A stretch of DNA of 63,420 bases, counting the filler, from Octopus bimaculoides (taxonomy: Eukaryota), in the NCBI RefSeq assembly GCF_001194135.2. It is 7 parts of 6 records of this genome, joined end to end, with 100 filler letters (N's around TTAATTAATTAA, not from the genome) between each part and the next. Parts side by side here need not be neighbours in the genome. Positions count along the whole stretch, not along the records: positions 1 to 12,657 come from NW_026363081.1; 6 more parts are not named here. One strand, written 5' to 3'. The notes beneath the pieces were generated by a model. The model ran no database searches, was not told where the DNA came from, and saw only the letters and a list, made by a program, of their open reading frames with translations. Made by a program: the position numbers and the translations under genes. Within the stretch, counting starts at the first letter, position 1. The number at the start of each line of letters is the position of its first letter. Positions 1 to 16,283 of this stretch are shown here, in pieces.

Positions 1-376
1 TTTCATCTGCCGTTACGTTCTGAGTTCAAATTACACCAAGGTCGACTTTACCTTTCATCCATTGGGGGTCGATAAATTAAGTACCAGTTACGCACTGGGG
101 TCGATGTAATCGACTTAATACCTTTGTCTGTCCTTGTTTGTCCCCTCTATGTTTAGCCCCTTGTGGGCAATAAAGAAATAAGAAACATTAGCATGCTGGG
201 CGAAATGTTTACTGGTATTTCGTCTGTGTTTATGTTCTGAGTTCAATTTCGCCGAGGCTGACTTTGCCTTTCATCCTTTTGGGGTCAATAAATTAAGTAC
301 CAGTTGTGTACTGGGGTCAATCTAATCAACCGCCCCCCCCCTCCCCCAAAATTTCAGGCCTAGAGTAGAAAAGAAT
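1..376 (+). mobile_element. Two tandem family A SINEs with different 3' tails
   Basis: 1-184 ends ...gcaataaagaaataagaaa; 185-376 ends ...aatttcaggcctagagtagaaaagaat. Confidence 0.88.
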
Positions 377-650: not shown

Positions 651-1660
651 GTAAGTGTATGAGCATCAGTTTACATGGCACGTGTATGGGAATATCTGAA
701 AAAAATCATGTAGAAACCACTAGAAAAAAATTAAAAAACGAACAACTCAGTTTTCTTTGCAAACTTCATTTATTTTATAAACCATAACTTTGTAAAATGG
801 CTATTTACAACACAGCGAAATCAAATCACAACATATAAAAGTTAACAAAAATGAAGACAAAATATACTGGTCAATATACGCTGTAGAACTAAGAAATTTA
901 TTTAATTGGTGTTAAGGTCACTTATACAGCTTTGGCTAATTGTGACAAAGTTTAACAATCATTCATATCTGCACATAAAGACCAGTAAATAAGGAGTAAC
1001 AGTATTCATTTTAAGGTTTGATTTTATGACTTGAAATTTGGGAGATTTGCAGAAATAGGAAAAATACATTAAATGCAAGAGATACATCNNNNNNNNNNNN
1101 NNNNNNNNNNNNNNNNNNNNNNNNNNNNNNNNNNNNNNNNNNNNNNNNNNNNNNNNNNNNNNNNNNNNNNNNNNNNNNNNNNNNNNNNNNNNNNNNNNNN
1201 NNNNNNNNNNNNNNNNNNNNNNNNNNNNNNNNNNNNNNNNNNNNNNNNNNNNNNNNNNNNNNNNNNNNNNNNNNNNNNNNNNNNNNNNNNNNNNNNNNNN
1301 NNNNNNNNNNNNNNNNNNNNNNNNNNNNNNNNNNNNNNNNNNNNNNNNNNNNNNNNNNNNNNNNNNNNNNNNNNNNNNNNNNNNNNNNNNNNNNNNNNNN
1401 NNNNNNNNNNNNNNNNNNNNNNNNNNNNNNNNNNNNNNNNNNNNNNNNNNNNNNNNNNNNNNNNNNNNNNNNNNNNNNNNNNNNNNNNNNNNNNNNNNNN
1501 NNNNNNNNNNNNNNNNNNNNNNNNNNNNNNNNNNNNNNNNNNNNNNNNNNNNNNNNNNNNNNNNNNNNNNNNNNNNNNNNNNNNNNNNNNNNNNNNNNNN
1601 NNNNNNNNNNNNNNNNNNNNNNNNNNNNNNNNNNNAATGTTTACTACTGTTTTATAACAG

Positions 1661-3345: not shown

Positions 3346-4107
3346 TTTACTGTGAATCACTGATGAAAGTTTCAACTGGCCAAATGAAAGTTTGCCTTTT
3401 TTGCCATACCAGTTATATAGCTTGCCTAATTTGCTGTTCAGGACATGGTGTGGTATCCTTCACACTGTGTCACTAGTATTTTTACCCAAGCACAGCAAGG
3501 CAATTAACACGAAAATGGATGCGATTTAAAAGTTCTTATCTATACGAGGTGTATCAAAACTCTCCCAACCACTGGCCAGAAAGGTCCACTACTCTACGAC
3601 TGCTCCCAGCACAAGACTTGTTCTCACCGTATGACGTCATTTCCTTCCCCTTTTTGTCTCTTCCTAACGTCACTCCCTCTCCCCTTGTCACTCATCTTTC
3701 CTCCACACATGAACAAGGAAATAGAACTGAAAACAAGTGTGTATATTAATTTATTTTTATTTAATCACTAGAAGTTACAACGTGACTCAAGTGAAGAGAG
3801 TTTCGTGCACTGTCACTTATCTGACCAAACACGTTTCAAATTGTGTGGGTGAGTGGGGTGTTTATATTCACATAGATACCGATTGAAATGATTAATATAA
3901 TTATCACTGGATTGTTCTAGACGAAATTAGAAACAAAAAACGTACAGGATCACGTCGATTATGAATATTGATTGTTTTCAAATTGTTTGCCTGTTGAGCA
4001 GTTCAATAAATGAATAAATAAAAAATACAGTAAAATGAATTATGTAAAGAAAAAGGTTAAAGAATATATGAATATATAAACATACATATAAGCAGGAGTA
4101 CCACAAA

Positions 4108-4642
4108 CAGGGTGTCCCAGAGTTAACTTTCTAGTTCATTGAAATCGAATAAATTATTTTAAATAAAGCTGAAAAATTTTTTATGAGTATTAGTTAATTA
4201 TGATACGAAATCAAACAGAATTTATAAACCTTACGTCAAAACTATATTGCAAAATTTACAACATGTGCTCCGTCTGAATCCTTCTAAGTTTCAAATCTGT
4301 CCTTAGCATTACGAAACACAAATTGAAGCATTTTAAGAAATACCTCCTGCACTGCTAACTGAATGCCTTCTTTAAGTCTAACCAAACTATTGCTCCATTC
4401 TGGGGGTGGAGCTATAGAAAATGATTTGAACAAAATTGAAAACAATGCTGTCGTGGCCAGATAAGCGGGATCCAACAGGAATGTAAAAGTTATTTTAAAA
4501 AATGAGAAAAATTATGAAATTATAGACAAAATTAAAAATTTATACGTTTTTGACAGATATTAAACAGGATAAACGTAAGTAAAAATAAGTTTCCTAAAGA
4601 ATTTTCCGATTTCACTGAAATACTTAATTCTTGGACACCCTG
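4108..4642 (-). mobile_element. Internally deleted Tc1/mariner element with TIRs
   Basis: TIRs CAGGGTGTCC(C/A)AGA at both ends, TA at 4643-44; residual transposase tail LVRLKEGIQLAVQEVFLKMLQFVFRNAKDRF...DGAHV. Confidence 0.75.
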
Positions 4643-4655
4643 TATGAGTGCACAT

Positions 4656-4704
<49 letters not shown>

Positions 4705-4941
4705 ATAAGCATGCATACATATGCACATACACACACGCATAGTTACATGCGTGGTTGTGCAGTTACAAAGCAAGCTTCGGAACTATGTGCTTTCGGGTTT
4801 AATCCTACTGTGTAGCAACTTAGACAAGTATCTTCTACTTATAATCCCGGGTTTTACTATACAACTAATTATTTGTGAGTGAATTTGGTTGATAGAAGCC
4901 GTGTGGTCATGTTGTATAAAACAGATCTTTTGATTGGTTAG

Positions 4942-4991
4942 TTACTCTTCCAAGCGGATGAAGATGGCCATGGAATCAGCTTTTTCAAAAT
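4942..4991 (-). CDS. Probable last coding exon: (N)FEKADSMAIFIRLEE-stop
   Basis: Acceptor ttttattattttccag| at 4992-4993; phase 1 matches the previous exon (A+AT = Asn); TAA at 4944-4942. AD-x-MAIFI is the expected end of this domain. A weak alternative donor (GA|GTAACT) overlaps the stop. Confidence 0.85.
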
Positions 4992-5149
4992 CTGGAAAAT
5001 AATAAAAGTAACAACAAAATTAACAGCAAAATCAACAATATGAATATTGTTTCTCTTCACGGGGTTCTGAGTTCAAAATATCGCAGAGACCGATGGAAAC
5101 GACAAATCTCCTCCCGACGAAACTGCTGGCCTTCTGTCAAAATCTGAAA

Positions 5150-5300
5150 TCAATATTTCCTTTCATTATTGATGACATAATCCCATCTATTTGGCAAATA
5201 ATTGATCCTTGGGACGTAAAATTCTTCAGCTTTCGAAGCAAAGAAACATTTAATATCATTTGTGACCTCATCACAATTGACAAAATCTTACATGGATCCT
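5150..5300 (-). mobile_element. Mariner transposase C-terminal relic
   Basis: Minus frame reads DFVNCDEVTNDIKCFFASKAEEFYVPRINYLPNRWDYVINNERKY, the typical mariner C-terminus. Confidence 0.7.
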
Positions 5301-5549
5301 TAGGGGTGAAATAGTCCCCAGTTAAGAACCACTCGACTAATATATCCATACTTAAATCCATAGTCTTATGCTTGTACAAGAGAGTGCTGCTGCTACTACT
5401 ACTACTACTACTACCTGAATATTTGAATAAGATGCCTTTATTTCTAAAACTTAGATTCTGCCAGCTCGCCAACTTTTAATAATGATGGTAGTAAATCTAG
5501 TGGTTTTAAAGATAAGTTAATATATAATTCCTTTAATATTAATCTGATC

Positions 5550-6228
5550 AGAATCCTGCCATGATCTTTGCCTTCAGTTCATCTTTGGTATTACAAGAAA
5601 CTTTGTTTGTCTCTCGCTCAACTGCGTCTCACACATAATTATCAAGGGGATTGCAATCTGGGGAGATAGGTAGCCAGATGTTAGGGGTGATGTGGTCGCA
5701 GAAATTGTCCGACGGCCATGACTGGGTTCCCCTGCTTGTGAGTCATGGTGCAGAGTCCTGTTGCCAGACATGGAATCTTCCAGCAGCCACCCTCTTTACC
5801 CAGGGCATCACTACCTCCTCCAGGCACTTGATGTAGGCCACCGTGTTGAGTCTGAAGCCGTGTGGGAAGATGAATAGGGGCATTACGTCGCCGTCACTAG
5901 TGAGCACTCCAAACATGATGGTGACTGGATGTTGGCTGAATGTTTGAGTTTTAGCACTCTCGGTACATGTTTTGGGGACACTGCAAGCCAACGGTTGTTC
6001 TGTGTGTTCACTACCTGTTCGTATTCGAGCTTCCGGCGCGAATGCCAAGCAATACATCATGTCGTTTCCAAATTTCTGGCAGAGTCAATTGCGTCATGGT
6101 GCTGTTTTTGTCACAGATGGTGCCCACTGATCCTACTATACTGTGTAGTCGACAAAACCAAAAACATCCAACGCGCATGCGCGAAATTGAAAAATATAGA
6201 ATGGCAACAATTTACCCATCGCAACCTG
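5550..6228 (-). mobile_element. Internally deleted maT (DD37D) Tc1/mariner relic
   Basis: Translates to NTQNNRWL...FGVLTSDGDVMPLFIFPHG...WQQDSAP...SPDCNPLD, with stops and frameshifts; one ITR ends near 6228. Confidence 0.88.
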
Positions 6229-6427
6229 TCTTTATGCCATTGTTTGGTTCCCTAACACTGCTTCATTATCGTTCTTTCCCTATAACTTAGTGGTGCTCTA
6301 GCATGGCCGCAATCAAATGACTAAAGTAAAAGCTAAAAGATGTCTACACTTCATTTCAATCAGTTTGGTCCTATGTTTGTCAGCTGTCTTATTTTTACGT
6401 GTATTTATTTTTTTCTCTTCTTATATA

Positions 6428-6632
6428 CCAGGGTGTGCTGAAAAGTTCCTGGCTTTGAGAAAAAGAAAATAAAGGAAGATTAGTTAAACATGATTTTATT
6501 CAGCATATTTCCCTCTCAAATTTACAAAATTACTACAGTAGTTGTTCAGTTTCTTTTAAGAACTCAGAAATTTGTGTCTCCAGCCAGGCTTTTCGCGATA
6601 CACTTAAAGCCAGGAGCTTTTCAGCAACCTCG
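6428..6632. mobile_element. Mariner-type MITE (about 205 bp)
   Basis: TIR core GCTGAAAAG(T/C)TCCTGGCTTT at both ends; TA on the left. Confidence 0.75.
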
Positions 6633-6852
6633 CGAACTAAATTTCCCCACACCTACACGTGTGTAATATTATATCACACGATGATGCTCTTCGTTAAGTA
6701 CTGTGAGACCTACGCTTCGCTGAGAAGGCATAACACCGAAACATGACCTGCGTTGTTTCTCGTGTTCGCCACGCAGTTATAATTAAACTTATAGTACTTA
6801 TAGTACATTAACCTAGCAGAGAGACAATTAAAGCAGATGACGAAATACTTAC

Positions 6853-7013
6853 TGTTATTCCATCTAATTCTCGAATTGTCACCTGAGTAAATTATGACAG
6901 GAAGAGGAATACGTTTCTCAAATTCACAGTGAGCAATTTCCAAAACATAGAGCCAACCTTTGTCTGCTTCACAACCATTATGCAAAGACGATATATAGAA
7001 ATTACGTCTTTGA
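6853..7013 (-). CDS. Internal coding exon (161 nt, phase 2 to 1): (H)QRRNFYISSLHNGCEADKGWLYVLEIAHCEFEKRIPLPVIIYSGDNSRIRWNN(N)
   Basis: Acceptor tttttctcctttttag| at 7014-7015 and donor |GTAAGT at 6852-6847. CA+T completes a His codon across the junction. R-x-F-x-I...GC-x2-D-x-GW...C-x-FE...IIYS continues the same domain. Lies inside track ORF 6710..7033. Confidence 0.9.
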
Positions 7014-7287
7014 CTAAAAAAGGAGAAAAACAAAATAAAGTTTCTTTGTAGTTATTGTTTTGCTGTTATTGCCGTTATCAGATCTTGTAATTTAGAAGCT
7101 TGCCTCGAATCTACATAATTTATGAAGCAAACTGGTTTCCAGGTTTGAACTGACACCGCTCATTGATACACTGGACAAGTAGTGTCCACTACTTTACAGT
7201 TCACGAAATCTTTGTGAGTGAAAGTTGCTTAGAAGTAATCTGTGTGTAGGACCATATTAAGAAGGACGGTCCTTATACGTGTGTAGT

Positions 7288-7668
7288 CTTTTCCCTCTTT
7301 GGCACTCCGTCGCTTACGACGTCGAGGGTTCCAGTTGAACCGATCCACGGAACAGCCTGCTCGTGAAATTAACGTGCAAGTGGCTGAGCACTCCACAGAC
7401 ACGTGTACCCTTAACGTAGTTCTCGGGGATATTCAGCGTGACACAGTGTGACAGGGCTGACCCTTTGAATTACAGGCACAACAGAAAGAGTGAGAGAAAG
7501 TTGTGGTGAAAGAGTACAGCAGGGTTCGCCACTATCCCCTGCCGGAGCCTCGTGGAGCTTGGGGTGTTTTCGCTCAATAAACACTCACAACACCCGGTCT
7601 GGGAATCGAAACCGCAATCCTATGACCGCGAGTCCGCTGCCCTAACCACTGGGCCATTGCGCCTCCAC
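7288..7668 (-). mobile_element. Full-length tRNA(Arg)-like SINE (family C) with 11-bp TSD
   Basis: TSD acgtgtgtagt at 7277-7287 and 7669-7679; head tggcccagtggttagggcagcggac...ggtttcgattccc. Confidence 0.92.
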
Positions 7669-8118
7669 ACGTGTGTAGTAGCCATTATTTATTAGCCAGT
7701 TTAACACAACAGCCTCACCTTTCGGCGAGGGGAGTTTAATAGAGACAATTCTTTTGCAAATATTTGGGCCAGTTTTTTTTTTTTTGCTTGGGAATAACTT
7801 CATCCCTTCCTCCTACCTAGCATTCGTAAAGGGCCAGAACAAAATTAAATGTCTTGTCCTTGCTCATCTGACTAAGGAATATTTCAAAGTGGTTATTCTT
7901 AGTCAAGAATGATCAATGGTCAAATGTATTTCAATTATTACTGTCCCCTCTTCGGATTACATTTCCAATATATACTACATTTAATCTTTAGACGGTAGGG
8001 TCTGATTTTAGCGATATTTATTGACAGTTATTTCTAGCAGGTGAAACTAGTTTATAGACAGAGGTTACTAACCACTTTTATAATTCCAGATCCACAAAGA
8101 ATTACCCCAAATGTCCCT

Positions 8119-8338
8119 TATTTCTTTATTGCCCACAAGGGGCTAAACATAGAGGGGACAAACAAAGGGATTAAGTCGATTACATCGACACCACTGCGTA
8201 ACTGGTACTTTATTTATCGACACGGAGAGGATGAAAGGCAAAGTCGACCTCGGCGGAATTTGAACTCAGAACGTTGCAGCAGACGAAATACCGACAAGCA
8301 TTTCGCCCGGCGCGCTAACGTTTCTGCCAGCTCGCAGC
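8119..8338 (-). mobile_element. Full-length tRNA-headed SINE (family A) with 17-bp TSD
   Basis: TSD ttaccccaaatgtccct at 8102-8118 and 8339-8355; A-box (tggcagaaacgttag) and B-box (gagttcaaattcc). Confidence 0.92.
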
Positions 8339-8727
8339 TTACCCCAAATGTCCCTATGTACTAATCAGGTGACTCAAATCCGCCACCGTCACGAGTCAAT
8401 ATAAGTATGCATATGTCATTCTATGTTATTAACTTATTTCGTTTAATTACTGTACAGATAAGCAAAAAACAGAAGAGGAAAGAAAATTATACAAATTTTG
8501 TTATATTTATTCGTAAGTGAATGGATCTCGGTCTGTTTCGAGGATGACTATCAGTATTCTGTTGTTCGGTCAAGTGAAATTCCTGTTCAACGAATTAGTA
8601 GCATGTGAAACTGGTTGAGCAATTGAAACCACGAACTCACAATCACATGTTGAACATCTTGACTACCAAGCCAAATGCCTTCCTTGATACACACATGTAT
8701 GTATATAAGTAAATTCCTGCGTGTGTG

Positions 8728-8760
<33 letters not shown>

Positions 8761-9067
8761 TTAGTTGTTGGCAACACAATTCTATGAAATCGATGAAATA
8801 CTATAAAAGAATGCAACGAAGTTAATTCTCAATCTTTGCAGGTAAACATTAATCAATAACATTAATCCCACGATTAAACTAATATTTACTGCAACGATCG
8901 AAATGCACGGGAAGTGTATATAGTTGATTATATAGACAATGTACTTCGCTGGTAGTTTATTCATAAACGCCAGTGGGATAAAAGTATGTGTTAATCCCAA
9001 AAGGTTTTGAACACGGAATATAATTACAAATAACTTTTTAGTTATTATACAGATAAAAATTACTTAC

Positions 9068-9231
9068 TGAAATCTATTCATTGCGAAGAGATTGACACCA
9101 GCTGCAGGTAGGTCGGACCAAGGAGAGCTTTTCAGCTTTTCACGCGAGAACCAGTTTCGAAGGTTTGTATTTCGTCCATTGAACACCATATTGACCACAG
9201 CTGTTTTGTTTTTGTAAATCACTAGTTTCAC
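9068..9231 (-). CDS. Internal coding exon (164 nt, phase 0 to 2) of an uncharacterised gene: VKLVIYKNKTAVVNMVFNGRNTNLRNWFSREKLKSSPWSDLPAAGVNLFAMNRF(H)
   Basis: Acceptor ttgtttttag| at 9232-9233 and donor |GTAAGT at 9067-9062; open frame. The F-x-G...WFS...SPW-x-DL pattern matches, from memory, an unnamed domain common in mollusc and other invertebrate proteins. Splices in frame to the next exon. Confidence 0.88.
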
Positions 9232-9258
9232 CTAAAAACAAATCGCCAATTATTATTA

Positions 9259-10558
9259 TTGGGTTGGTGCATAATTATTGCGACTTTTTTTTTCAACACA
9301 TTTTATTCAACAAAAACAATAACAACATGTCACAAAAACATCTTTAAATGATTATTCCGAAGCATATTCACAATCTACTTCAATTACTGCTTCCCATTTG
9401 CTTGGCAGATGGTCGATTCCACAGGCGAAGTTACTGCTCTTAGAGGCAATCCACTCTTTGACGGCAGTCACCAAGCCATCCAAATCGTCAGAAACTTTGT
9501 TCGCGAGCCAATGTTTCAGCGATCGATTGACGTGATAGTCCGTAGGCGCTTCTGAAGGACAATACGGCGGATGAAGATGCAGTTCCTAGCCCTCATTGGC
9601 GATAGATTCGACGACACGACCATCAACATGTGGACGTGCATTACCGTAGTGGAAGACGATATGGTTCATTTTGCGCGCTCTTTTCCTCTCGATTGCAGCG
9701 TGAATATGGTCAAGTTGAGCGAGAGAAATGTCGCTGTTGATATTTAATTGCCGCTTGCCGTTTCTGTCCGGAATCCGCCACTGTTGACGCCCATCGTCGT
9801 CATTCCACCGATAACAAATTCTGTTTGAGATGATTTCCCAGTGAATGATACCGCTCCTGTCCCACCAAACACACCACATTTCCTTCTTACAGTGGACGTC
9901 TTTCGGTATTCCTTTAGGTGAAACACCTGGCGAAACGCAAGCCTTCTTTCTTTTGACGTTTTTAAAGAGAAGCCATGATTCATCCCCAGTGACGGGATTC
10001 TTCAGGAACAGAGTTTGCTCATTTCGCTGCAGAAAATCTGTAAAAATTCGGACACGTTCGGCTTTGTTGTTATCGGGGAGTTCGTGGTGGACCCACACAG
10101 CTAGTTTCCCTACTTTGCCGAGCTTTTTTAGACGACGAACGATGGTCGAATGGTCCACATTGAAGCCCTCGGCCAACATTCTCGTTGTCAAGCTTTTGTC
10201 CTCTTCCACGGCTGCCAAAAGTGCCTCGTCGTTGAAATTTGACGATCGGCCTCTTCTTTTTTCATCTGCGAGGTTTCTTGAACTTCCTGAACCATCTTTC
10301 AACTTGGCTTTTGATGATTGTTCCTTCACCAAAATGTTCATTGAGATCGCGAAATGACTGTGCTGCATTCCAACCTTTCTCGAAGTGGTAGAGCATAATA
10401 TGACGAATGTGGATATGATTTTCGATACGCATTTTTATAAAAAAATTTTTAAAAGCCGACCGTTATTTAAAGACGTTTTTCTTAAATATTGTTATTGTTT
10501 TTGTTTAATAAAATTTGTTGAAAGAAACAAAAGCCGCAATAATTATGCACCAACCCAA
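9259..10558 (-). mobile_element. Full-length (1300 bp) mariner DNA transposon with Hsmar1/cecropia-like ITRs
   Basis: ITRs TTGGGTTGGTGCATAATTATTGCG(A/G)CT extend imperfectly to about 75 bp; TA at 9257-58 and 10559-60; inserted in a (TAT)n tract. Confidence 0.95.
9352..10432 (-). pseudogene. Inactivated mariner (DD34D) transposase
   Basis: Starts MRIENHIHIRHIMLYHFEKGWNAAQSFRDL, with a frameshift after WFRKFK. Then WVHHEL, TGDESW, HYGNARPH (second catalytic D changed to G), a premature TAG at 9588-9586, HPPYCPSEAPTDY and TAA at 9354-9352. Confidence 0.95.
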
Positions 10559-10572
10559 TATTATTATTATTA

Positions 10573-10630
<58 letters not shown>
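10559..10630. repeat. (ATT)n microsatellite (others at 11630-11698, 29436-29635, 54800-54976)
   Basis: Read directly. Confidence 0.98.
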
Positions 10631-10631
10631 T

Positions 10632-10800
10632 TCCGCCTTAGTGAAGGCGAAGGTATTGTTTTTCAGTGGTGTTTGTCTGTTTGCTTGTCCGTGGACAAGA
10701 CATTTCAAGAAGCGATGGATGGATCCTGATGAAACTTTCAGGGTTGTTTGGCCTCGTGACTGATTAGGTTTTGGGATCGATCCGGTACCGGACAAGGATT
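10632..10800 (+). mobile_element. Possible Helentron/DINE-1-like non-autonomous element
   Basis: Starts after a TTA tract with hairpin cgcctt-agtg-aaggcg, then a GTCTGT-like tract and atcctgatgaaacttt. Family assignment is from memory. Confidence 0.4.
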
Positions 10801-11194
10801 TTGTATCTTTCGTTATATTTACTTTACATGAAGCATTACGATCTTACTTCGACTTCAAAGTCTTTCTTTGATTATCTCCCTTCAAAGCACGCTCATGGTC
10901 TCCACGTTAAGTCATGACGTTGCTGTTTCCAACGTTCTATTTTCGTTTCTCAGTTATTAATTTTACGCACGTCTCTATCTTAGTAGAAACTGATGGATTA
11001 AGAAATCAAACTACATAAACAAACGGCAGCAAAACCGTTCAGAAATTAAATAACACTAACATATTCAGTAACAATAATAAATTTAATTTAACCTCGACAA
11101 TTTTTAGTTGTACCGATTTTGTATATATCACTCCTGCTTAAAACCTCTTACCTACTTCACAATTGCATTTCTAGCTCTGCTTTGAATGAAGCTT

Positions 11195-11350
11195 TACGAT
11201 TTTGTGCGCAACGATGTTGTTAAACCTCCGTTACTAGCACCATATGCGGGTCCTTTCCGTTATCTTTCACGCACGGATAAATGTTTCACTAAAAGCTTTA
11301 ATGGTCGTAAAGACTCTGAATCAGTGGATATGCTAAAAAAGGGCCTTCAT
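11195..11350 (+). mobile_element. Ty3/Gypsy integrase C-terminal relic
   Basis: FVRNDVVKPPLLAPYAGPFRYLSRTDKCFTKSFNGRKDSESVDMLK matches the GPY/F module of Gypsy pol. Confidence 0.75.
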
Positions 11351-11627
11351 AGCGAAAACTGTCCCTGTTTCCACTGCAGACAACACACACACAGCATTAG
11401 AAACTCGGACCGCACACCCACCTTCACATTCCACAACTATTTTTCCGGTTTTCTTTTAGTTAACTTTTGAGAGCGGTCAGGTTCATTTTTAGTATTCTCG
11501 TTTGTGAGAACCGTCGAGTTTATTTCAGATATTCATATTTTTAAAAAAATCATCTCCAGCTAATCGTTGTGATGACGTTGGTGTTGCTTTGGCAGGAGTG
11601 TGGGGGGGGGGCGCACTCTGAGTGCTC

Positions 11628-11698
<71 letters not shown>

Positions 11699-12235
11699 GA
11701 GTGAGAGAGCAGTGCATGCCATCAAAATGACACTGGGGTACAAATATATGAAGCCCATTATACCCATCATGACTACCCGTCTGATAAGCGCAAACCAGGC
11801 ATATGTATCGCAGCCATATTTGCGCGACATGGTGAATTCATATAGAGATAAACAGCGCATGACCTTGCAGGTAGGGGCCCAGTTAGAATTTCTTTCAGGC
11901 TGAGTAGCCCATCCCACTTACAAAGTCCCTGAATTAGAGTTAAGGATGTTGAACGAAATACCCATGTTTCCAGCGGTGAATTATTCAAACTCCAAAGAAT
12001 TCCTCTCAACACATGGCTATGATGCACCCCACTACTTCTACTCGTGATCAGTGATGCACATATCGCAGCCACCAAGGGACACGCTCAACTGATTAAGGTG
12101 AAACAACTGACAAGCAAATCTGTGGAATTGAGCAGAATATTTCCTGTGGCCCAGACAAAACAATGTACATGATAACACTTCCAATCAGTTAAGATCAAAA
12201 GCCATGAAAACCACTACCAGTTAATGCATCAGGAC
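11699..12235 (-). mobile_element. About 537-bp interspersed repeat inserted in a (TAA)n microsatellite (possibly Dong/R4-related)
   Basis: Sharp boundaries with (TTA)n on both sides; recognised from memory as an abundant octopus repeat. The clade assignment is inference from the target site. Confidence 0.55.
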
Positions 12236-12657
12236 ATTTATTATTATTATTATTATTGTTGTTGTTGTTGTTGTGCTAGCCGTATACCCGTATGCTAGCC
12301 AAATTTCATCTGTACCGATAAAAAAAAAAAAAACATCAGTGACTGATGAGTGTTTGGTGCCGTGAGTAGCTGGATGACTGGGGGGAAATTAGGCATTAGT
12401 GGCAGAAGAAGTATTAGTCCTGAATTGACATCGTTATATCATAGTTAACGTGATTATAGTTTAAGAACGGAATAATAAACCTGCAGTCTTCGTTCTGAGA
12501 AAGTATCTCGTATAGACATATAGTGATAAAAAGCTCAGAATACTACTATGGGTGTATGCTAATGAGGCGCAAACACAATGAAGCCACCTAATCTAACAGG
12601 TCCACTGCCGGTGATGGACATTTTTGTCGGCTGCTGATATTTCGTGCTTTTTAGCAT

Positions 12658-12757
12658 NNNNNNNNNNNNNNNNNNNNNNNNNNNNNNNNNNNNNNNNNNN
12701 NTTAATTAATTAANNNNNNNNNNNNNNNNNNNNNNNNNNNNNNNNNNNNNNNNNNNN
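12658..12757. other. Assembly spacer N44-TTAATTAATTAA-N44 (linker also at 22427, 28868, 44142, 56288, 62140)
   Basis: 100-bp gaps with a 12-mer that has a stop codon in all six frames; not genomic sequence. Confidence 0.93.
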
Positions 12758-13149
12758 ATATATATATATATATATATGCCTCTGTGTGTGTGTATGTGTG
12801 TGTATGCGCACGCACGTAATTGTGCGTTGCTTTCTCACACACACTCACACGCACACACACATATATCAAATATTACATTATTGCACATTTTATGTATGAA
12901 TCATTGCATATCATCAAGTTATGTACTTTCACATACACACGAACGCATATACCCCCATACATACATACATACACACACATACATACATGCACCAATGCAT
13001 GCATACACACTCAACTCACGCGCATTCTCATATATTAATTTCGTTGCTTCTGACTACATTTGTGAATATGTATGGAATGCATATTTTCATGTACCCGTAT
13101 GGGAGTGAATACGGGTGTGTGGGTGTTTGAGTTTGTGTGTGAGTGTGTA

Positions 13150-13202
<53 letters not shown>

Positions 13203-13315
13203 AAGAGACAGAGAGAGACAGAGAGAGACAGAGAGAGACAGAGAAAGAAAGAGAGCGAGGGGGTTGTATGTTTGTGTGTGTGTGAAAGAGATGAGATAAA
13301 CAGCATTTTGTACGT

Positions 13316-13794
13316 ATTTACGTTCTAGGTTCAAATTCTGCCGAGGTGGACTTTGCCTTTCGGAGGTATTTCATCGTAGATGTGTACGGTACTCGAAGAG
13401 CTGCTGCGGAAGGGGTCACCTTTCCGATTACGATTCCAAAAGGACTTACGTCAGATGCGCTCAAAATCATGATTTGAAATAAGTCCGATTTGAGCACTGG
13501 GCTCAACGTGATCAACGATCGCCCGGCCACAAAATTTCAAACCTTGTTCCTATAGATGAAGGGTTAATCATTATTATCGAACAAGATCAAGACGGTGAGC
13601 TGACAAAATCGGTAGCACCTCGGATACAAAGCATAGCGGCGTTTCGCCCGTCTTTACGTTTTAAGTTCAACTTTTGACTTTCGTCCTTTCGGACTTCATA
13701 TAATATGTACCAGTTGGGCTCTGGAGTCGATCTAGACTCTTACCCCAAGACTCCTGCCCCAAATCTTCAGATCTTGTGCCTCTAATAGAAAGGA
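13316..13794 (+). mobile_element. Two family A SINEs; the first carries an internal foreign segment
   Basis: Family A motifs at 13316-13562 and 13590-13794. Confidence 0.75.
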
Positions 13795-14404
13795 TCTGTC
13801 AGTATCTTTCTCATTATCGTTTATTTGTTTCAGTCATTAGACTGCGGCCGTGCTGGAGCATCGCCTTGAAGATATTCAGTCGAACGAATCGACCCTAATT
13901 CTTATTTATTTTTTACACCTTTTACATATTCTCTCGGTCTGTTTTACCGAACCACTAGCTTACGGGGATGTGAACAAACCAACACCAGTTGTCAAGAGGT
14001 GATGGGGACAAACATAGACACACACACACACACACACATACACGCGCGACAGGCTTCGTTCAGTTTCCATCTACCATATCAACTCACAAGGCTTTTGGTC
14101 GGCCCGAGGCTATAGTAGAAGACACTTGCCCAAGGTGCCATGCAGTGGGACTGAACCCAGGATCCACGCGACTGGAAAGAAAACTTCTTTTTTTACACGT
14201 GGAACAAGAATGTTTAACAGCATTTCTTCCGGCTCTTAACGTTCTGAGTTCAAATGCCGCCGAGGTCAACTTTACCGTTTATCCTTCCAATATTCGATAA
14301 AATAGGTACCAGACGAGCGCTTAGACCGGATACAGTCAACCGGCCCCTTCCCACACAAAATCTCCGGCCCTAGGCTGAAATTTTAATTCTATTATCATGG
14401 AAGA

Positions 14405-14467
14405 TGACTATGATGATGATGATGATGATGATGATGATGGTGGTGGTGATGGTGGTGTTTAGTAATT

Positions 14468-14507
<40 letters not shown>

Positions 14508-14700
14508 CGATGATGATGATGATGACGGAGATGACGACCACGAAGCTAATGATTGCTGATGGTGGTGTTACCGGCCTATTGCTTCTAATAGTGCTGCTGA
14601 CGGTTACGGTTGTTGCTGCCAATTCCTGCTGCAGCCAGTTGCTGCTGTTGTATTTCATTGCTGCCGTTGTTGTTGTTGTTGTTGTTGTTGTCGTTGTCAC
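14405..14700. repeat. (GAT)/(GGT)/(GTT) trinucleotide low-complexity tract (similar at 17890-18210 and 30438-30850)
   Basis: Read directly. Confidence 0.95.
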
Positions 14701-14822
14701 AGTTTCCAGTCTGGCGATGATTCAGCATATTCCGAAAAATGTGCGGAATTCAATTAACTTTTTTGTCCTCGCTGTTGCTGTTGTATGTGCAGACGTATGC
14801 ATGGATATACATACATACAAAC

Positions 14823-14873
<51 letters not shown>

Positions 14874-16283
14874 CATATATATATATATATATATATANNN
14901 NNNNNNNNNNNNNNNNNNNNNNNNNNNNNNNNNNNNNNNNNNNNNNNNNNNNNNNNNNNNNNNNNNNNNNNNNNNNNNNNNNNNNNNNNNNNNNNNNNNN
15001 NNNNNNNNNNNNNNNNNNNNNNNNNNNNNNNNNNNNNNNNNNNNNNNNNNNNNNNNNNNNNNNNNNNNNNNNNNNNNNNNNNNNNNNNNNNNNNNNNNNN
15101 NNNNNNNNNNNNNNNNNNNNNNNNNNNNNNNNNNNNNNNNNNNNNNNNNNNNNNNNNNNNNNNNNNNNNNNNNNNNNNNNNNNNNNNNNNNNNNNNNNNN
15201 NNNNNNNNNNNNNNNNNNNNNNNNNNNNNNNNNNNNNNNNNNNNNNNNNNNNNNNNNNNNNNNNNNNNNNNNNNNNNNNNNNNNNNNNNNNNNNNNNNNN
15301 NNNNNNNNNNNNNNNNNNNNNNNNNNNNNNNNNNNNNNNNNNNNNNNNNNNNNNNNNNNNNNNNNNNNNNNNNNNNNNNNNNNNNNNNNNNNNNNNNNNN
15401 NNNNNNNNNNNNNNNNNNNNNNNNNNNNNNNNNNNNNNNNNNNNNNNNNNNNNNNNNNNNNNNNNNNNNNNNNNNNNNNNNNNNNNNNNNNNNNNNNNNN
15501 NNNNNNNNNNNNNNNNNNNNNNNNNNNNNNNNNNNNNNNNNNNNNNNNNNNNNNNNNNNNNNNNNNNNNNNNNNNNNNNNNNNNNNNNNNNNNNNNNNNN
15601 NNNNNNNNNNNNNNNNNNNNNNNNNNNNNNNNNNNNNNNNNNNNNNNNNNNNNNNNNNNNNNNNNNNNNNNTTTTTTTTTTTTTTTTCAGCTTTATATTA
15701 CATTAATCTTATATATATACATATAAATATATATATGTATCTAGGTGCATATATGTATGCATGTTTGTATACGTGTGTGTGTGCATCTGCACGCGTGTGC
15801 ACTGACGCGAGTGTGCACGTGTGTACGAATACTACTTTCTGACCGTCCCTTCTTCCCAATATGTCGGTATGCGTTGATTGTGCTGGCTGCGGGCACCAAG
15901 AATAACACAGGCACCGGGCGAGGAAACGGTCAAATGTTGTTCTTTGTCTCCTCCCAGATCATATTTCCACCACACCCTCCAACCCCTTCCCCGCTGTGCC
16001 CTTCCATTCGCCAGCTCACCACAACCACTCCGGCTGCTGGTGTGACGCGGGGGCGGGGTAGCTGCTGCTACTACTACTACTGCTGCCGCTACTATTACTA
16101 CTACTACTACTACTACTACTACAAATACACGTGAATACACAACCACAATGCATATGTATGCTGTTAATACGCATACATATATACACATATACGCGTATGT
16201 ATACACACATAATTATACATACATACACACACTTGTGTATATATATGTGTGTGTGTGCGTTTGTGTGTGTATATTCATTTATT

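What the first reader, a model, noticed from the sequence alone, without database searches (positions are those of the whole stretch)
4942..9231. Hidden three-exon gene segment encoding an unnamed invertebrate domain
Seen: three minus-strand exons with canonical GT-AG sites and matching phases (0-2, 2-1, 1-stop) join into 124 stop-free codons with conserved-looking W, C and G residues; the ORF track shows only the middle exon. From memory, the signature (VFNG..T...WFS...SPW.DL...R.F.I....GC..D.GW...C..E...IYS...AD.MAIFI) belongs to a poorly characterised domain that is expanded in octopus, where it is often followed by small Cys-rich VWC/pacifastin-like repeats. Here it ends at a stop, suggesting a stand-alone version. 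Function unknown.
Basis: partly seen in the sequence, partly recalled or inferred. Interest (0 to 1): 0.7.

Follow-up and report, generated by a model that had tools for sequence, protein, structure and literature searches.

The report
Octopus secreted-protein gene, last three exons
The three exons are real, but they are the tail of an already annotated, uncharacterised Octopus bimaculoides gene from a large tandemly duplicated family of secreted proteins, whose unnamed C-terminal domain is widespread in marine invertebrates and is evolving unusually fast here.

Summary
Observation confirmed. Minus-strand exons 9231-9068, 7013-6853 and 4991-4942 have GTAAGT donors and polypyrimidine-AG acceptors. 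They join into 124 codons plus TAA.

The peptide is residues 50-173 of RefSeq "uncharacterized protein LOC106880085" (100% identity), so the gene is not hidden. It is also not stand-alone. A further 179-nt exon lies upstream on the same 16-kb contig, and conservation continues past its annotated Met. Full-length paralogues add a 331-nt first exon (hydrophobic N-terminus plus PAN/Apple) that falls off this contig.

A paralogue has exons of 331/179/164/161/53 nt; the collinear O. vulgaris locus has 179/164/161/50.

The roughly 175-aa domain has no Pfam family, yet 903 cluster representatives match it, from octopus, bivalves, coral, echinoderms, hemichordate, amphioxus and Myxococcota. It usually ends the protein. 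Partner domains found were EGF, Sushi, C-type lectin, TSP1, VWD/TIL and ZP; no VWC or pacifastin family was reported.

In coral and bacterial members it directly follows a fibrinogen-type A subdomain. Homology to the rest of the fibrinogen domain is not significant.

Exon D is 73% identical between species, against 85-88% for its flanking introns (dN/dS about 2.5), while family-conserved residues are kept. Likely role, inferred only: a secreted recognition protein under diversifying selection.

The parts
9068..9231 (-). It encodes residues 50-104 of LOC106880085 (VKLVIYKNKTAVVNMVFNGRNTNLRNWFSREKLKSSPWSDLPAAGVNLFAMNRF).
   Evidence: sequence and splice sites. (100% identity to the RefSeq protein). 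(the same 164-nt exon in a paralogue and in the O. vulgaris counterpart).
6853..7013 (-). Coding exon D, 161 nt, phase 2 in and 1 out. It encodes the conserved R-x-F, C..D.GW and second Cys core (residues about 105-158). This is the fastest-evolving exon.
   Evidence: (same 161-nt exon); dN/dS 2.5, 73% nucleotide identity against 85-88% in the flanking introns, and 11/12 conserved versus 16/42 other residues identical.
4942..4991 (-). Last coding exon E, 50 nt including the TAA stop (4944-4942). It encodes NFEKADSMAIFIRLEE, the final strand of the domain. The 3' UTR continues towards lower coordinates.
   Evidence: 50 nt in O. vulgaris, 53 nt in the paralogue.
7014..9067 (-). Intron C-D (2054 nt, GTAAGT...TTTTTTAG). 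It contains SINE-like repeats and a (CA)n microsatellite.
4992..6852 (-). Intron D-E (1861 nt, GTAAGT...TTTTCCAG). It contains open reading frames at 5574-6060 that look, from memory only, like a transposase remnant.
   Evidence: Pfam found nothing for these ORFs.
9232..12657 (-). The 3' part of the 6580-nt intron B-C. Exon B (179 nt) and the rest of this intron lie beyond the window on the same contig (L001 47-225).
9287..10527 (-). Degenerate mariner-like transposon inside intron B-C, about 55 nt upstream of the exon C acceptor. It has 63-nt terminal inverted repeats and a broken transposase.
   Evidence: I4: arms 9287-9349 and 10465-10527, 87% complementary. (HTH_48 at 1.4e-18, Transposase_1 at 5e-9). 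(12 stop codons in the translation).
4798..4803 (-). ATTAAA, a possible polyadenylation signal 141 nt after the stop. Pattern match only.

Best explanation
Shown: window 4942-9231 (minus strand) holds the last three coding exons of O. bimaculoides gene LOC106880085. The gene has at least four exons on this contig. By comparison with full-length paralogues it has five (331/179/164/161/50-53 nt). The first exon, which encodes a hydrophobic N-terminus and a PAN/Apple module, lies beyond the end of the 16-kb contig. RefSeq's 173-aa protein is therefore N-terminally truncated.

The exons in the window encode about two thirds of a roughly 175-aa C-terminal domain. Its signature is HYRs..D.W...VKl.LY...V..lvFdG.GS...WFS..RL..SPW.DL...NyFSI.G...RrFfIn..YgGC..D.GWLvV....C.WE....P.IlYS.....W....AD..AIfi. 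It has one nearly invariant Cys pair and no Pfam family.

The domain is an old extracellular module. It occurs in cephalopods, bivalves, a coral, echinoderms, a hemichordate, amphioxus and some Myxococcota. It usually sits at the C-terminus, and often shares a protein with lectin or adhesion modules. In coral and bacterial members it follows a fibrinogen-type A subdomain (C..CDM..GGGWT) and occupies the place of the B/P lobes.

The octopus PAN-plus-domain subfamily is tandemly expanded.

Inferred: the product is a secreted, lectin-like recognition or binding protein. The PAN module and the C-terminal domain would each bind extracellular ligands such as glycans or proteins, plausibly on microbes. 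The variable surface encoded by exon D would be the ligand-contacting part and is under diversifying selection, while the hydrophobic and disulfide core is conserved.
For: Gene identity and structure:
- The joined peptide is 100% identical to LOC106880085.
- Exon B has an acceptor AG, and its frame is open and conserved upstream of the annotated Met.
- Paralogue LOC106872447 has exons 331/179/164/161/53 nt with phases 1/0/2/1.
- The O. vulgaris counterpart has exons 179/164/161/50. Exons and introns are collinear between the two loci.

Family:
- 903 cluster representatives match at E<=1e-3 and 511 at <=1e-10.
- The usual form is about 290 aa with the domain ending the protein.
- All nearly invariant residues are present in this gene.
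- No Pfam family covers the domain.

Fold:
- An AlphaFold2 model of a 60%-identical full-length paralogue has mean pLDDT 86, and about 95 in the domain.
- Its N-terminal part matches HGF and plasminogen PAN domains with Foldseek probability about 1.

Fibrinogen link:
- Pfam Fibrinogen_C positions 4-54 and COLFI match immediately upstream of the domain in coral and bacterial members.

Selection:
- dN/dS is 1.2 overall, 0.7-0.8 in exons B and C, and 2.5 in exon D.
- Exon D is 73% identical between species, against 85-88% for its flanking introns.
- The chance that the reading frame stays open after 104 random substitutions is 0.008.
- Family-conserved positions are 23/26 identical, against 90/147 for the others. 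Within exon D the figures are 11/12 against 16/42, Fisher p=0.002.
Against: - I had no expression or protein data, so the splice junctions rest on the RefSeq model and on comparative conservation.
- Exon A of this particular gene was not seen.
- No ligand, binding site or catalytic motif is known for any family member. The function is inferred from partner domains, secretion, expansion and evolutionary rate.
- dN/dS near or above 1 also fits relaxed constraint.
- The O. bimaculoides copy has lineage-specific changes at two family-conserved positions (S99A, G102R) where O. vulgaris keeps the consensus. A third departure from the consensus (W135F) is shared with O. vulgaris.
- The link to fibrinogen-related lectins rests only on adjacency in some members and on weak Foldseek hits (E 0.03-0.3, probability 0.2-0.47).
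- Profile-profile scores against the fibrinogen B/P region are no better than shuffled controls.
- dN/dS comes from one species pair, using the simple Nei-Gojobori method.
Confidence: 0.6

Rival explanations
1. A decaying duplicate. The locus would be a truncated or non-functional copy of the family that drifts neutrally, and the intact reading frame would be a leftover.
For: Overall dN/dS is 1.2. The gene sits on a short unplaced 16-kb contig without its first exon. It has derived substitutions at family-conserved positions (S99A, G102R) and transposons in its introns.
Against: The reading frame is intact in both species with identical exon lengths and no indels. The chance of no stop codon after the observed 104 substitutions is 0.008. 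All splice sites are strong. Family-conserved residues are preferentially kept: 23/26 against 90/147, and 11/12 against 16/42 within exon D, p=0.002. Exon D diverges faster than the neighbouring introns, which neutral drift does not produce.
Confidence: 0.12
2. A structural extracellular component, for example of mucus, egg coat, cuticle or sucker lining. The domain would mediate self-assembly or matrix cross-linking rather than recognition of foreign or variable ligands.
For: The domain occurs in ZP, VWD/TIL, EGF, TSP1 and D8C (uromodulin-like) mosaic proteins, which are typically polymer- or matrix-forming. PAN/Apple modules also occur in matrix and adhesion proteins.
Against: Matrix components are usually conserved. 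Here exon D evolves faster than its introns, and the family is tandemly expanded with 50-60% identity between paralogues. The domain also sits next to C-type lectin, SUEL and discoidin modules and after the fibrinogen A subdomain, which are lectin contexts.
Confidence: 0.2
3. One reading: a previously unannotated, stand-alone version of a domain that is normally followed by VWC/pacifastin-like Cys-rich repeats.
For: The domain does end at a stop codon. Only the middle exon exceeds 60 aa in a plain ORF list.
Against: RefSeq annotates the gene. There are upstream exons, and paralogues have an N-terminal PAN module. A C-terminal position is the family norm. No VWC or pacifastin family was reported in the members scanned.
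Confidence: 0.03

Closest known systems
Fibrinogen-related domain proteins (Pfam PF00147: ficolins, angiopoietins, tenascins, mollusc FREPs)
   Same: Both are secreted extracellular proteins. In coral (P0150) and Myxococcota (P0036, P0039, P0090) members, the domain directly follows a genuine fibrinogen A subdomain with the C..CDM..GGGWT motif, and the whole unit is about 220 aa, the size of a fibrinogen-related domain. The octopus strand QWIKAYALSMG lines up with GGGWTLVFKAVSG. Corals also have PAN plus canonical fibrinogen-domain proteins. After the PAN hits, most of the listed Foldseek matches are fibrinogen-type domains. Lineage-specific expansion and fast evolution recall snail FREPs (from my own knowledge).
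   Different: Octopus members have PAN/Apple instead of the A subdomain. Pfam Fibrinogen_C stops matching at profile position about 54 of 221. Profile-profile comparison with 117 real fibrinogen-related domains is not significant, and no better than shuffled or reversed controls once the A subdomain is removed. Foldseek E-values are 0.03-0.3 with TM-scores about 0.3. The calcium and acetyl-group binding motifs of the P subdomain are not recognisable.
Intelectins / X-type lectins
   Same: This is an analogy in architecture. Intelectins keep a short fibrinogen-like N-terminal segment, followed by a remainder that diverged beyond sequence recognition. Intelectin-1 and XEEL hit the same roughly 50-residue segment of the coral member.
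   Different: There is no similarity to intelectin beyond that segment, and no intelectin hit for the octopus protein or for the domain profile.
PAN/Apple domain proteins (HGF N domain, plasminogen, apicomplexan MIC4)
   Same: Full-length octopus and bivalve family members start with a PAN/Apple module. Pfam PAN_1/3/4 match 17, 4 and 6 of 96 members. Foldseek matches HGF and plasminogen PAN domains with probability about 1. The family profile also touches MIC4 apple domains, though not significantly (E 0.38).
   Different: The PAN module is not encoded in the window or on this contig. It is not the domain the finding is about.
Pfam DUF7922 (PF25538)
   Same: This is the only Pfam entry that touches the domain itself. 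An amphioxus protein with four copies reaches a summed 32 bits at the F-x-G...WFS..RL.SSPW motif.
   Different: No single copy passes on its own. None of 96 members match at E<=0.05, and the window protein does not match at E<=10. The relationship is unresolved, and no paper mentions this DUF.

Membership tests
Unnamed 'PAN/Apple + C-terminal ~175-aa domain' family (RefSeq 'uncharacterized protein' / UniRef 'Apple domain-containing protein') | Full-length profile similarity of the C-terminal domain | tested here: met
   (P0001 at 2.1e-102; 903 representatives at E<=1e-3). (4.8e-58 against a 64-sequence profile).
Unnamed 'PAN/Apple + C-terminal ~175-aa domain' family (RefSeq 'uncharacterized protein' / UniRef 'Apple domain-containing protein') | Nearly invariant core residues: W42, F66, W76, F98, R107, F109, C118, G123, W124, C133, Y146, A162 (LOC106880085 numbering) | tested here: met
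   All are present. The gene departs from the consensus only at less strict positions (S99A, G102R, W135F).
Unnamed 'PAN/Apple + C-terminal ~175-aa domain' family (RefSeq 'uncharacterized protein' / UniRef 'Apple domain-containing protein') | Shared exon structure (179/164/161/50-53 nt; phases 1, 0, 2, 1) | tested here: met
Unnamed 'PAN/Apple + C-terminal ~175-aa domain' family (RefSeq 'uncharacterized protein' / UniRef 'Apple domain-containing protein') | N-terminal signal peptide plus PAN/Apple module (exon A) | not testable with these tools
   The contig ends 46 nt upstream of exon B. Exon A is seen only in paralogues and in the O. vulgaris counterpart.
Fibrinogen-related domain (Pfam PF00147) | A subdomain with a disulfide and the CDM..GGGWT motif | tested here: not met
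   It is absent from the window gene and from the octopus paralogues, which have PAN instead. It is present in coral and bacterial members of the same domain family.
Fibrinogen-related domain (Pfam PF00147) | Sequence-profile similarity to the B and P subdomains | tested here: not met
   (probability 0.2). (probability 0.13). (real score 11.9, against 12.5 +/- 2.0 for shuffled and 19.9 for reversed). The long alignment is carried by the A subdomain.
Fibrinogen-related domain (Pfam PF00147) | Fold similarity to solved fibrinogen-type domains | tested here: inconclusive
   fibrinogen, ficolin and angiopoietin chains make up most of the non-PAN hits listed, but at E 0.03-0.3, probability 0.2-0.47 and TM-score about 0.3. 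The domain could not be searched on its own.
Fibrinogen-related domain (Pfam PF00147) | Calcium and acetyl-group (ligand) binding residues of the P subdomain | not testable with these tools
   There is no reliable alignment to the P subdomain.
Pfam DUF7922 (PF25538) | Match above the Pfam gathering score | tested here: not met
   (no hit). Only a summed sub-threshold hit on amphioxus P0004.
   (the domain ends the protein in most representatives). (no VWC or pacifastin family reported; TIL in one VWD/ZP protein).

The most novel reading that the evidence does not exclude
The domain would be an undescribed, ancient extracellular recognition module, present in Metazoa and in some Myxococcota, that can replace the B/P lobes of the fibrinogen-related domain behind the same A subdomain. 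The octopus PAN-fused subfamily would be a tandemly expanded, positively selected repertoire of soluble pattern-recognition proteins. That would make it a cephalopod counterpart of snail FREPs, with exon D encoding the hypervariable ligand-binding surface.
Probability: 0.25. Interest if true: 0.6.

Novelty: new variant of a known kind. Interest (0 to 1): 0.35.

Why it matters
The gene itself is already in RefSeq, so finding it adds nothing. The useful part is the context.

A domain with about 900 cluster representatives across marine invertebrates has no Pfam entry, and I found no paper on it. In some lineages it sits where the ligand-binding lobes of fibrinogen-type lectins sit. In octopus it forms a tandem family in which at least this member has an exon diverging faster than its introns while the core residues are kept.

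If the family proves to be a recognition repertoire, it would add a candidate class of innate-immune or other extracellular receptors in cephalopods. It would also give the domain a name and a testable function.

There are two practical corrections to annotation. The O. bimaculoides model is N-terminally truncated by the contig end, and the O. vulgaris model skips an intact exon.

Tried and rejected
- Pfam on the joined peptide, the full RefSeq protein and 96 family members: nothing covers the domain.
- PDB sequence searches with the peptide and with a 64-sequence profile: only chance-level or PAN-module hits (AcrF1 at E 0.4; MIC4 apple domain at E 0.38).
- AlphaFold2 on the truncated protein with three sequences: unusable, pLDDT 37.
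- Foldseek against BFVD: PAN hits only.
- Test of the 'divergent fibrinogen-related domain' idea. Those 117 came from a search using a consensus bait that I wrote from memory. Neither comparison was significant.
- Including the A subdomain gives probability 98% and a Cys-to-Cys extended alignment. Shuffled and reversed controls show that the part beyond the A subdomain carries no signal, so I do not count it as evidence.
- Literature searches for DUF7922, for six LOC/XP identifiers, for 'octopus + apple domain' and for 'fibrinogen-related + PAN domain + mollusc': no papers.
- tRNA and Rfam scans of the window: nothing.
- Pseudogene reading: considered and judged unlikely.
- Gene conversion as the cause of exon D divergence: judged unlikely by eye. 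The two orthologous exon D peptides share distinctive residues (SSLHN, C-x-FE, P-x-PVI-x-YS) that paralogue P0157 lacks. I did not test this formally.


Full report

Yes. On the minus strand, 9231-9068 (164 nt), 7013-6853 (161 nt) and 4991-4942 (50 nt) are bounded by polypyrimidine-AG acceptors and GTAAGTA donors. They join into 375 nt, which is 124 codons plus TAA.

The joined peptide is 100% identical, over its full length, to residues 50-173 of NCBI 'uncharacterized protein LOC106880085 [Octopus bimaculoides]' (E 5.5e-79). The public annotation therefore already uses exactly these junctions. Chance is excluded, but the gene is not 'hidden'.

**2. What is the whole gene?**

The window is the reverse complement of positions 3380-16036 of a 16,036-bp unplaced contig, LGKD02068210.1.

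- The RefSeq coding sequence starts at contig position 79, in an exon that is not in the window (no tblastn hit).
- That exon (contig 47-225, 179 nt) begins at an acceptor (tttcag|AT AGT CAA TGG).
- Its frame is open and conserved before the annotated Met. It reads DSQWIKAYALS-MGAGSKVY here, YRQWIKTYALT-MRAGSKVY in O. sinensis and SSEWIKAYALSMGANSLIY in an O. bimaculoides paralogue.
- Only 46 nt of ATT repeat lie upstream before the contig ends.

The full-length paralogue LOC106872447 (295 aa, 60% identical) has five coding exons of 331/179/164/161/53 nt with phases 1, 0, 2, 1. This gene has 179/164/161/50 nt with the same phases. The 173-aa RefSeq protein is therefore truncated at the N-terminus by the contig end. 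Exon A is missing. In paralogues exon A encodes a hydrophobic N-terminus that looks like a signal peptide (by inspection; no signal-peptide predictor was run), followed by a PAN/Apple module.

**3. Orthologue**

In O. vulgaris (OX597841.1, locus L003) a gene with exons of 179/164/161/50 nt is collinear with this contig through exons and introns (blastn blocks at 79-89% identity; exon coordinates).

- Its annotation (P0008) skips the intact exon B and uses a 42-nt substitute.
- Intron B-C is about 1.1 kb there and 6.6 kb here. Most of the extra sequence has no collinear match in the O. vulgaris intron and includes a mariner-like element.
- The same 29-kb stretch holds three family members.

**4. 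The domain family**

Pfam has no model for it. An exhaustive profile search found 903 cluster representatives at E<=1e-3 and 511 at E<=1e-10.

The commonest form among the best 152 is a protein of about 290 aa, with the domain starting near residue 120 and ending within a few residues of the C-terminus.

The nearly invariant residues are W42, F66, W76, F98, R107, F109, C118, G123, W124, C133, Y146 and A162, and all are present in this gene.

Named members come from:
- Octopus bimaculoides, O. sinensis, O. vulgaris and Argonauta;
- bivalves (Crassostrea, Potamilus, Sinanodonta, Dreissena, Argopecten);
- the coral Oculina;
- the sea star Acanthaster and the crinoid Anneissia;
- the hemichordate Saccoglossus;
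- amphioxus, with many members;
- Myxococcota bacteria.

No vertebrate appeared among the members I looked up.

Partner domains are PAN/Apple, EGF, Sushi, C-type lectin, SUEL lectin, discoidin, TSP1, VWD/TIL, D8C, fn3, ZP and GPS-7TM. No VWC or pacifastin family was reported. The expansion in octopus is real.

**5. Fold and relationship to known families**

With 96 sequences, AlphaFold2 gave a confident model of the full-length paralogue: mean pLDDT 86, and about 95 across the C-terminal domain. The domain is a mixed alpha/beta structure.

Foldseek against the PDB found no hit at E<=1e-3.
- The N-terminal module matches HGF and plasminogen PAN domains (probability about 1).
- Most of the remaining listed hits are fibrinogen-type domains (fibrinogen fragment D, ficolins, angiopoietin-2, ANGPTL3), but weakly: E 0.03-0.3, probability 0.2-0.47, TM-score about 0.3.
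- BFVD gave only PAN hits.

Independently, in the coral protein P0150 and in bacterial or unnamed multi-domain proteins (P0036, P0039, P0054, P0090), the domain is directly preceded by a genuine fibrinogen A subdomain ('SCKDLL..G....GVY.I......F.VYCDM..GGGWTLVFK'). Pfam Fibrinogen_C positions 4-54 of 221 match there, as does COLFI, and PDB chains of angiopoietin, ficolin, tenascin, FIBCD1 and intelectin hit the same 50 residues. The GGGWTLVFK strand is the first strand of our domain, QWIKAYALS in octopus. The A subdomain plus our domain comes to about 220 aa, the size of a fibrinogen-related domain.

I tested whether the rest is a diverged fibrinogen B/P region. The domain profile compared with 117 real fibrinogen-related domains gives probability 0.13. 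With the A subdomain included, hhalign reports probability 98% and an extended alignment that pairs the two Cys residues with the fibrinogen P-subdomain Cys pair. With the A subdomain removed, the score (11.9) is no better than block-shuffled controls (12.5 +/- 2.0) or a reversed control (19.9).

Membership in the fibrinogen-related family is therefore not shown. What is shown is that the domain can occupy the same position behind the same A subdomain. The fold relationship remains open.

Pfam DUF7922 gives only a summed sub-threshold hit on one amphioxus protein with four copies.

**6. Evolutionary rate**

Comparing this gene with its O. vulgaris counterpart gives 184 aligned codons with no indels.

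| Region | dN/dS | Nucleotide identity |
|---|---|---|
| All four exons | 1.20 (dS 0.19) | 81% |
| Exon B | 0.78 | 84% |
| Exon C | 0.70 | 85% |
| Exon D | 2.5 | 73% |
| Exon E (15 codons) | 3.7 | 86% |

The dN/dS values are, the overall nucleotide identity, and the per-exon identities. The introns flanking exon D are 85-88% identical, so exon D diverges faster than the non-coding DNA around it.

- The reading frame would survive 104 random substitutions with probability 0.008.
- Family-conserved positions are 23/26 identical, against 90/147 for the rest.
- Within exon D the figures are 11/12 against 16/42 (Fisher p=0.002).

This is the pattern of a conserved scaffold with a diversifying surface. 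It is not the pattern of a pseudogene.

Two caveats apply. This is one species pair analysed with a simple method. The O. bimaculoides copy also carries derived S99A and G102R changes.

**7. Most likely function (inferred)**

The evidence is indirect: a hydrophobic N-terminus and a PAN module in paralogues, a Cys-stabilised C-terminal domain that keeps company with lectin and adhesion modules and with the fibrinogen A subdomain, tandem expansion, and an exon under apparent positive selection.

Together these point to a secreted recognition or binding protein, lectin-like and plausibly immune-related, with the exon D surface contacting the ligand. I rate the complete statement (gene structure, family membership and this function) at 0.6.

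**8. Verdict**

It is partly wrong: the gene is not hidden, it is not stand-alone, and no VWC or pacifastin partner was found among the relatives scanned.

The gene is already annotated. The domain family is undescribed but looks like an ordinary extracellular module, so interest is moderate to low. It is raised somewhat by the fibrinogen-A-subdomain connection and by the fast-evolving exon.

Noticed in passing
window 9287-10527: A degenerate mariner-like (Mos1-type) transposon with 63-nt terminal inverted repeats (87% complementary) and a broken transposase (HTH_48, Transposase_1, 12 stop codons). It sits in the intron only about 55 nt upstream of the exon C acceptor. The O. vulgaris intron is 1.1 kb against 6.6 kb here, and most of the extra sequence has no collinear match there.
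   Followed up: partly
window 1-330 and 8156-8325: SINE-like repeat copies. There are two tandem copies at 29-114 and 245-330, and an inverted copy in intron C-D (133 nt, 86% complementary). Their translations give similar spurious ORFs (115-246 and 8041-8364).
   Followed up: no
window about 7229-7690: A repeat that looks, by eye only, like a tRNA-derived SINE with its head near 7600-7680; ARAGORN and Rfam found nothing. Its translation (…VTLCHAE…, …CTLISRAGCSVDRFNWNPRRRKRRSA…) reappears as the N-terminus of another family member's gene model (P0007). That suggests the model has a repeat-derived or misannotated first exon.
   Followed up: partly
L003 13647-13825 (O. vulgaris OX597841.1): The O. 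vulgaris counterpart's annotated protein (P0008, 238 aa) skips an intact, conserved 179-nt exon B and uses a 42-nt exon (L003 10453-10494) instead. This looks like an annotation error. Three family members lie within this 29-kb locus in mixed orientation.
   Followed up: partly
P0036, P0039, P0090 (Myxococcota and unnamed metagenome contigs): Large bacterial-type surface proteins (TIG, FG-GAP, MopE and CarboxypepD_reg domains) end in two or three tandem units of fibrinogen A subdomain plus this domain. Either the module is very old or it moved between animals and bacteria.
   Followed up: partly
P0243, P0259, P0284, P0296 (Oculina patagonica): Coral proteins combine PAN_1 with a canonical Fibrinogen_C domain. 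This is the same two-module plan as the octopus PAN plus unnamed-domain proteins.
   Followed up: no
window 5574-6060 (minus strand): Open reading frames in intron D-E (…FIFPHGFRLNTVAYIKCLEEVVMPWVKRV…WQQDSAP…) resemble, from memory, the DDE region of a Tc1/mariner-type transposase. Pfam gave no hit.
   Followed up: partly
window 1089-1635; 10561-10640; 11628-11700; about 4650-4720; about 8740-8770: An assembly gap (a run of N), long (ATT)n microsatellites and (CA)n tracts. These produce several of the long spurious ORFs in the ORF list.
   Followed up: no
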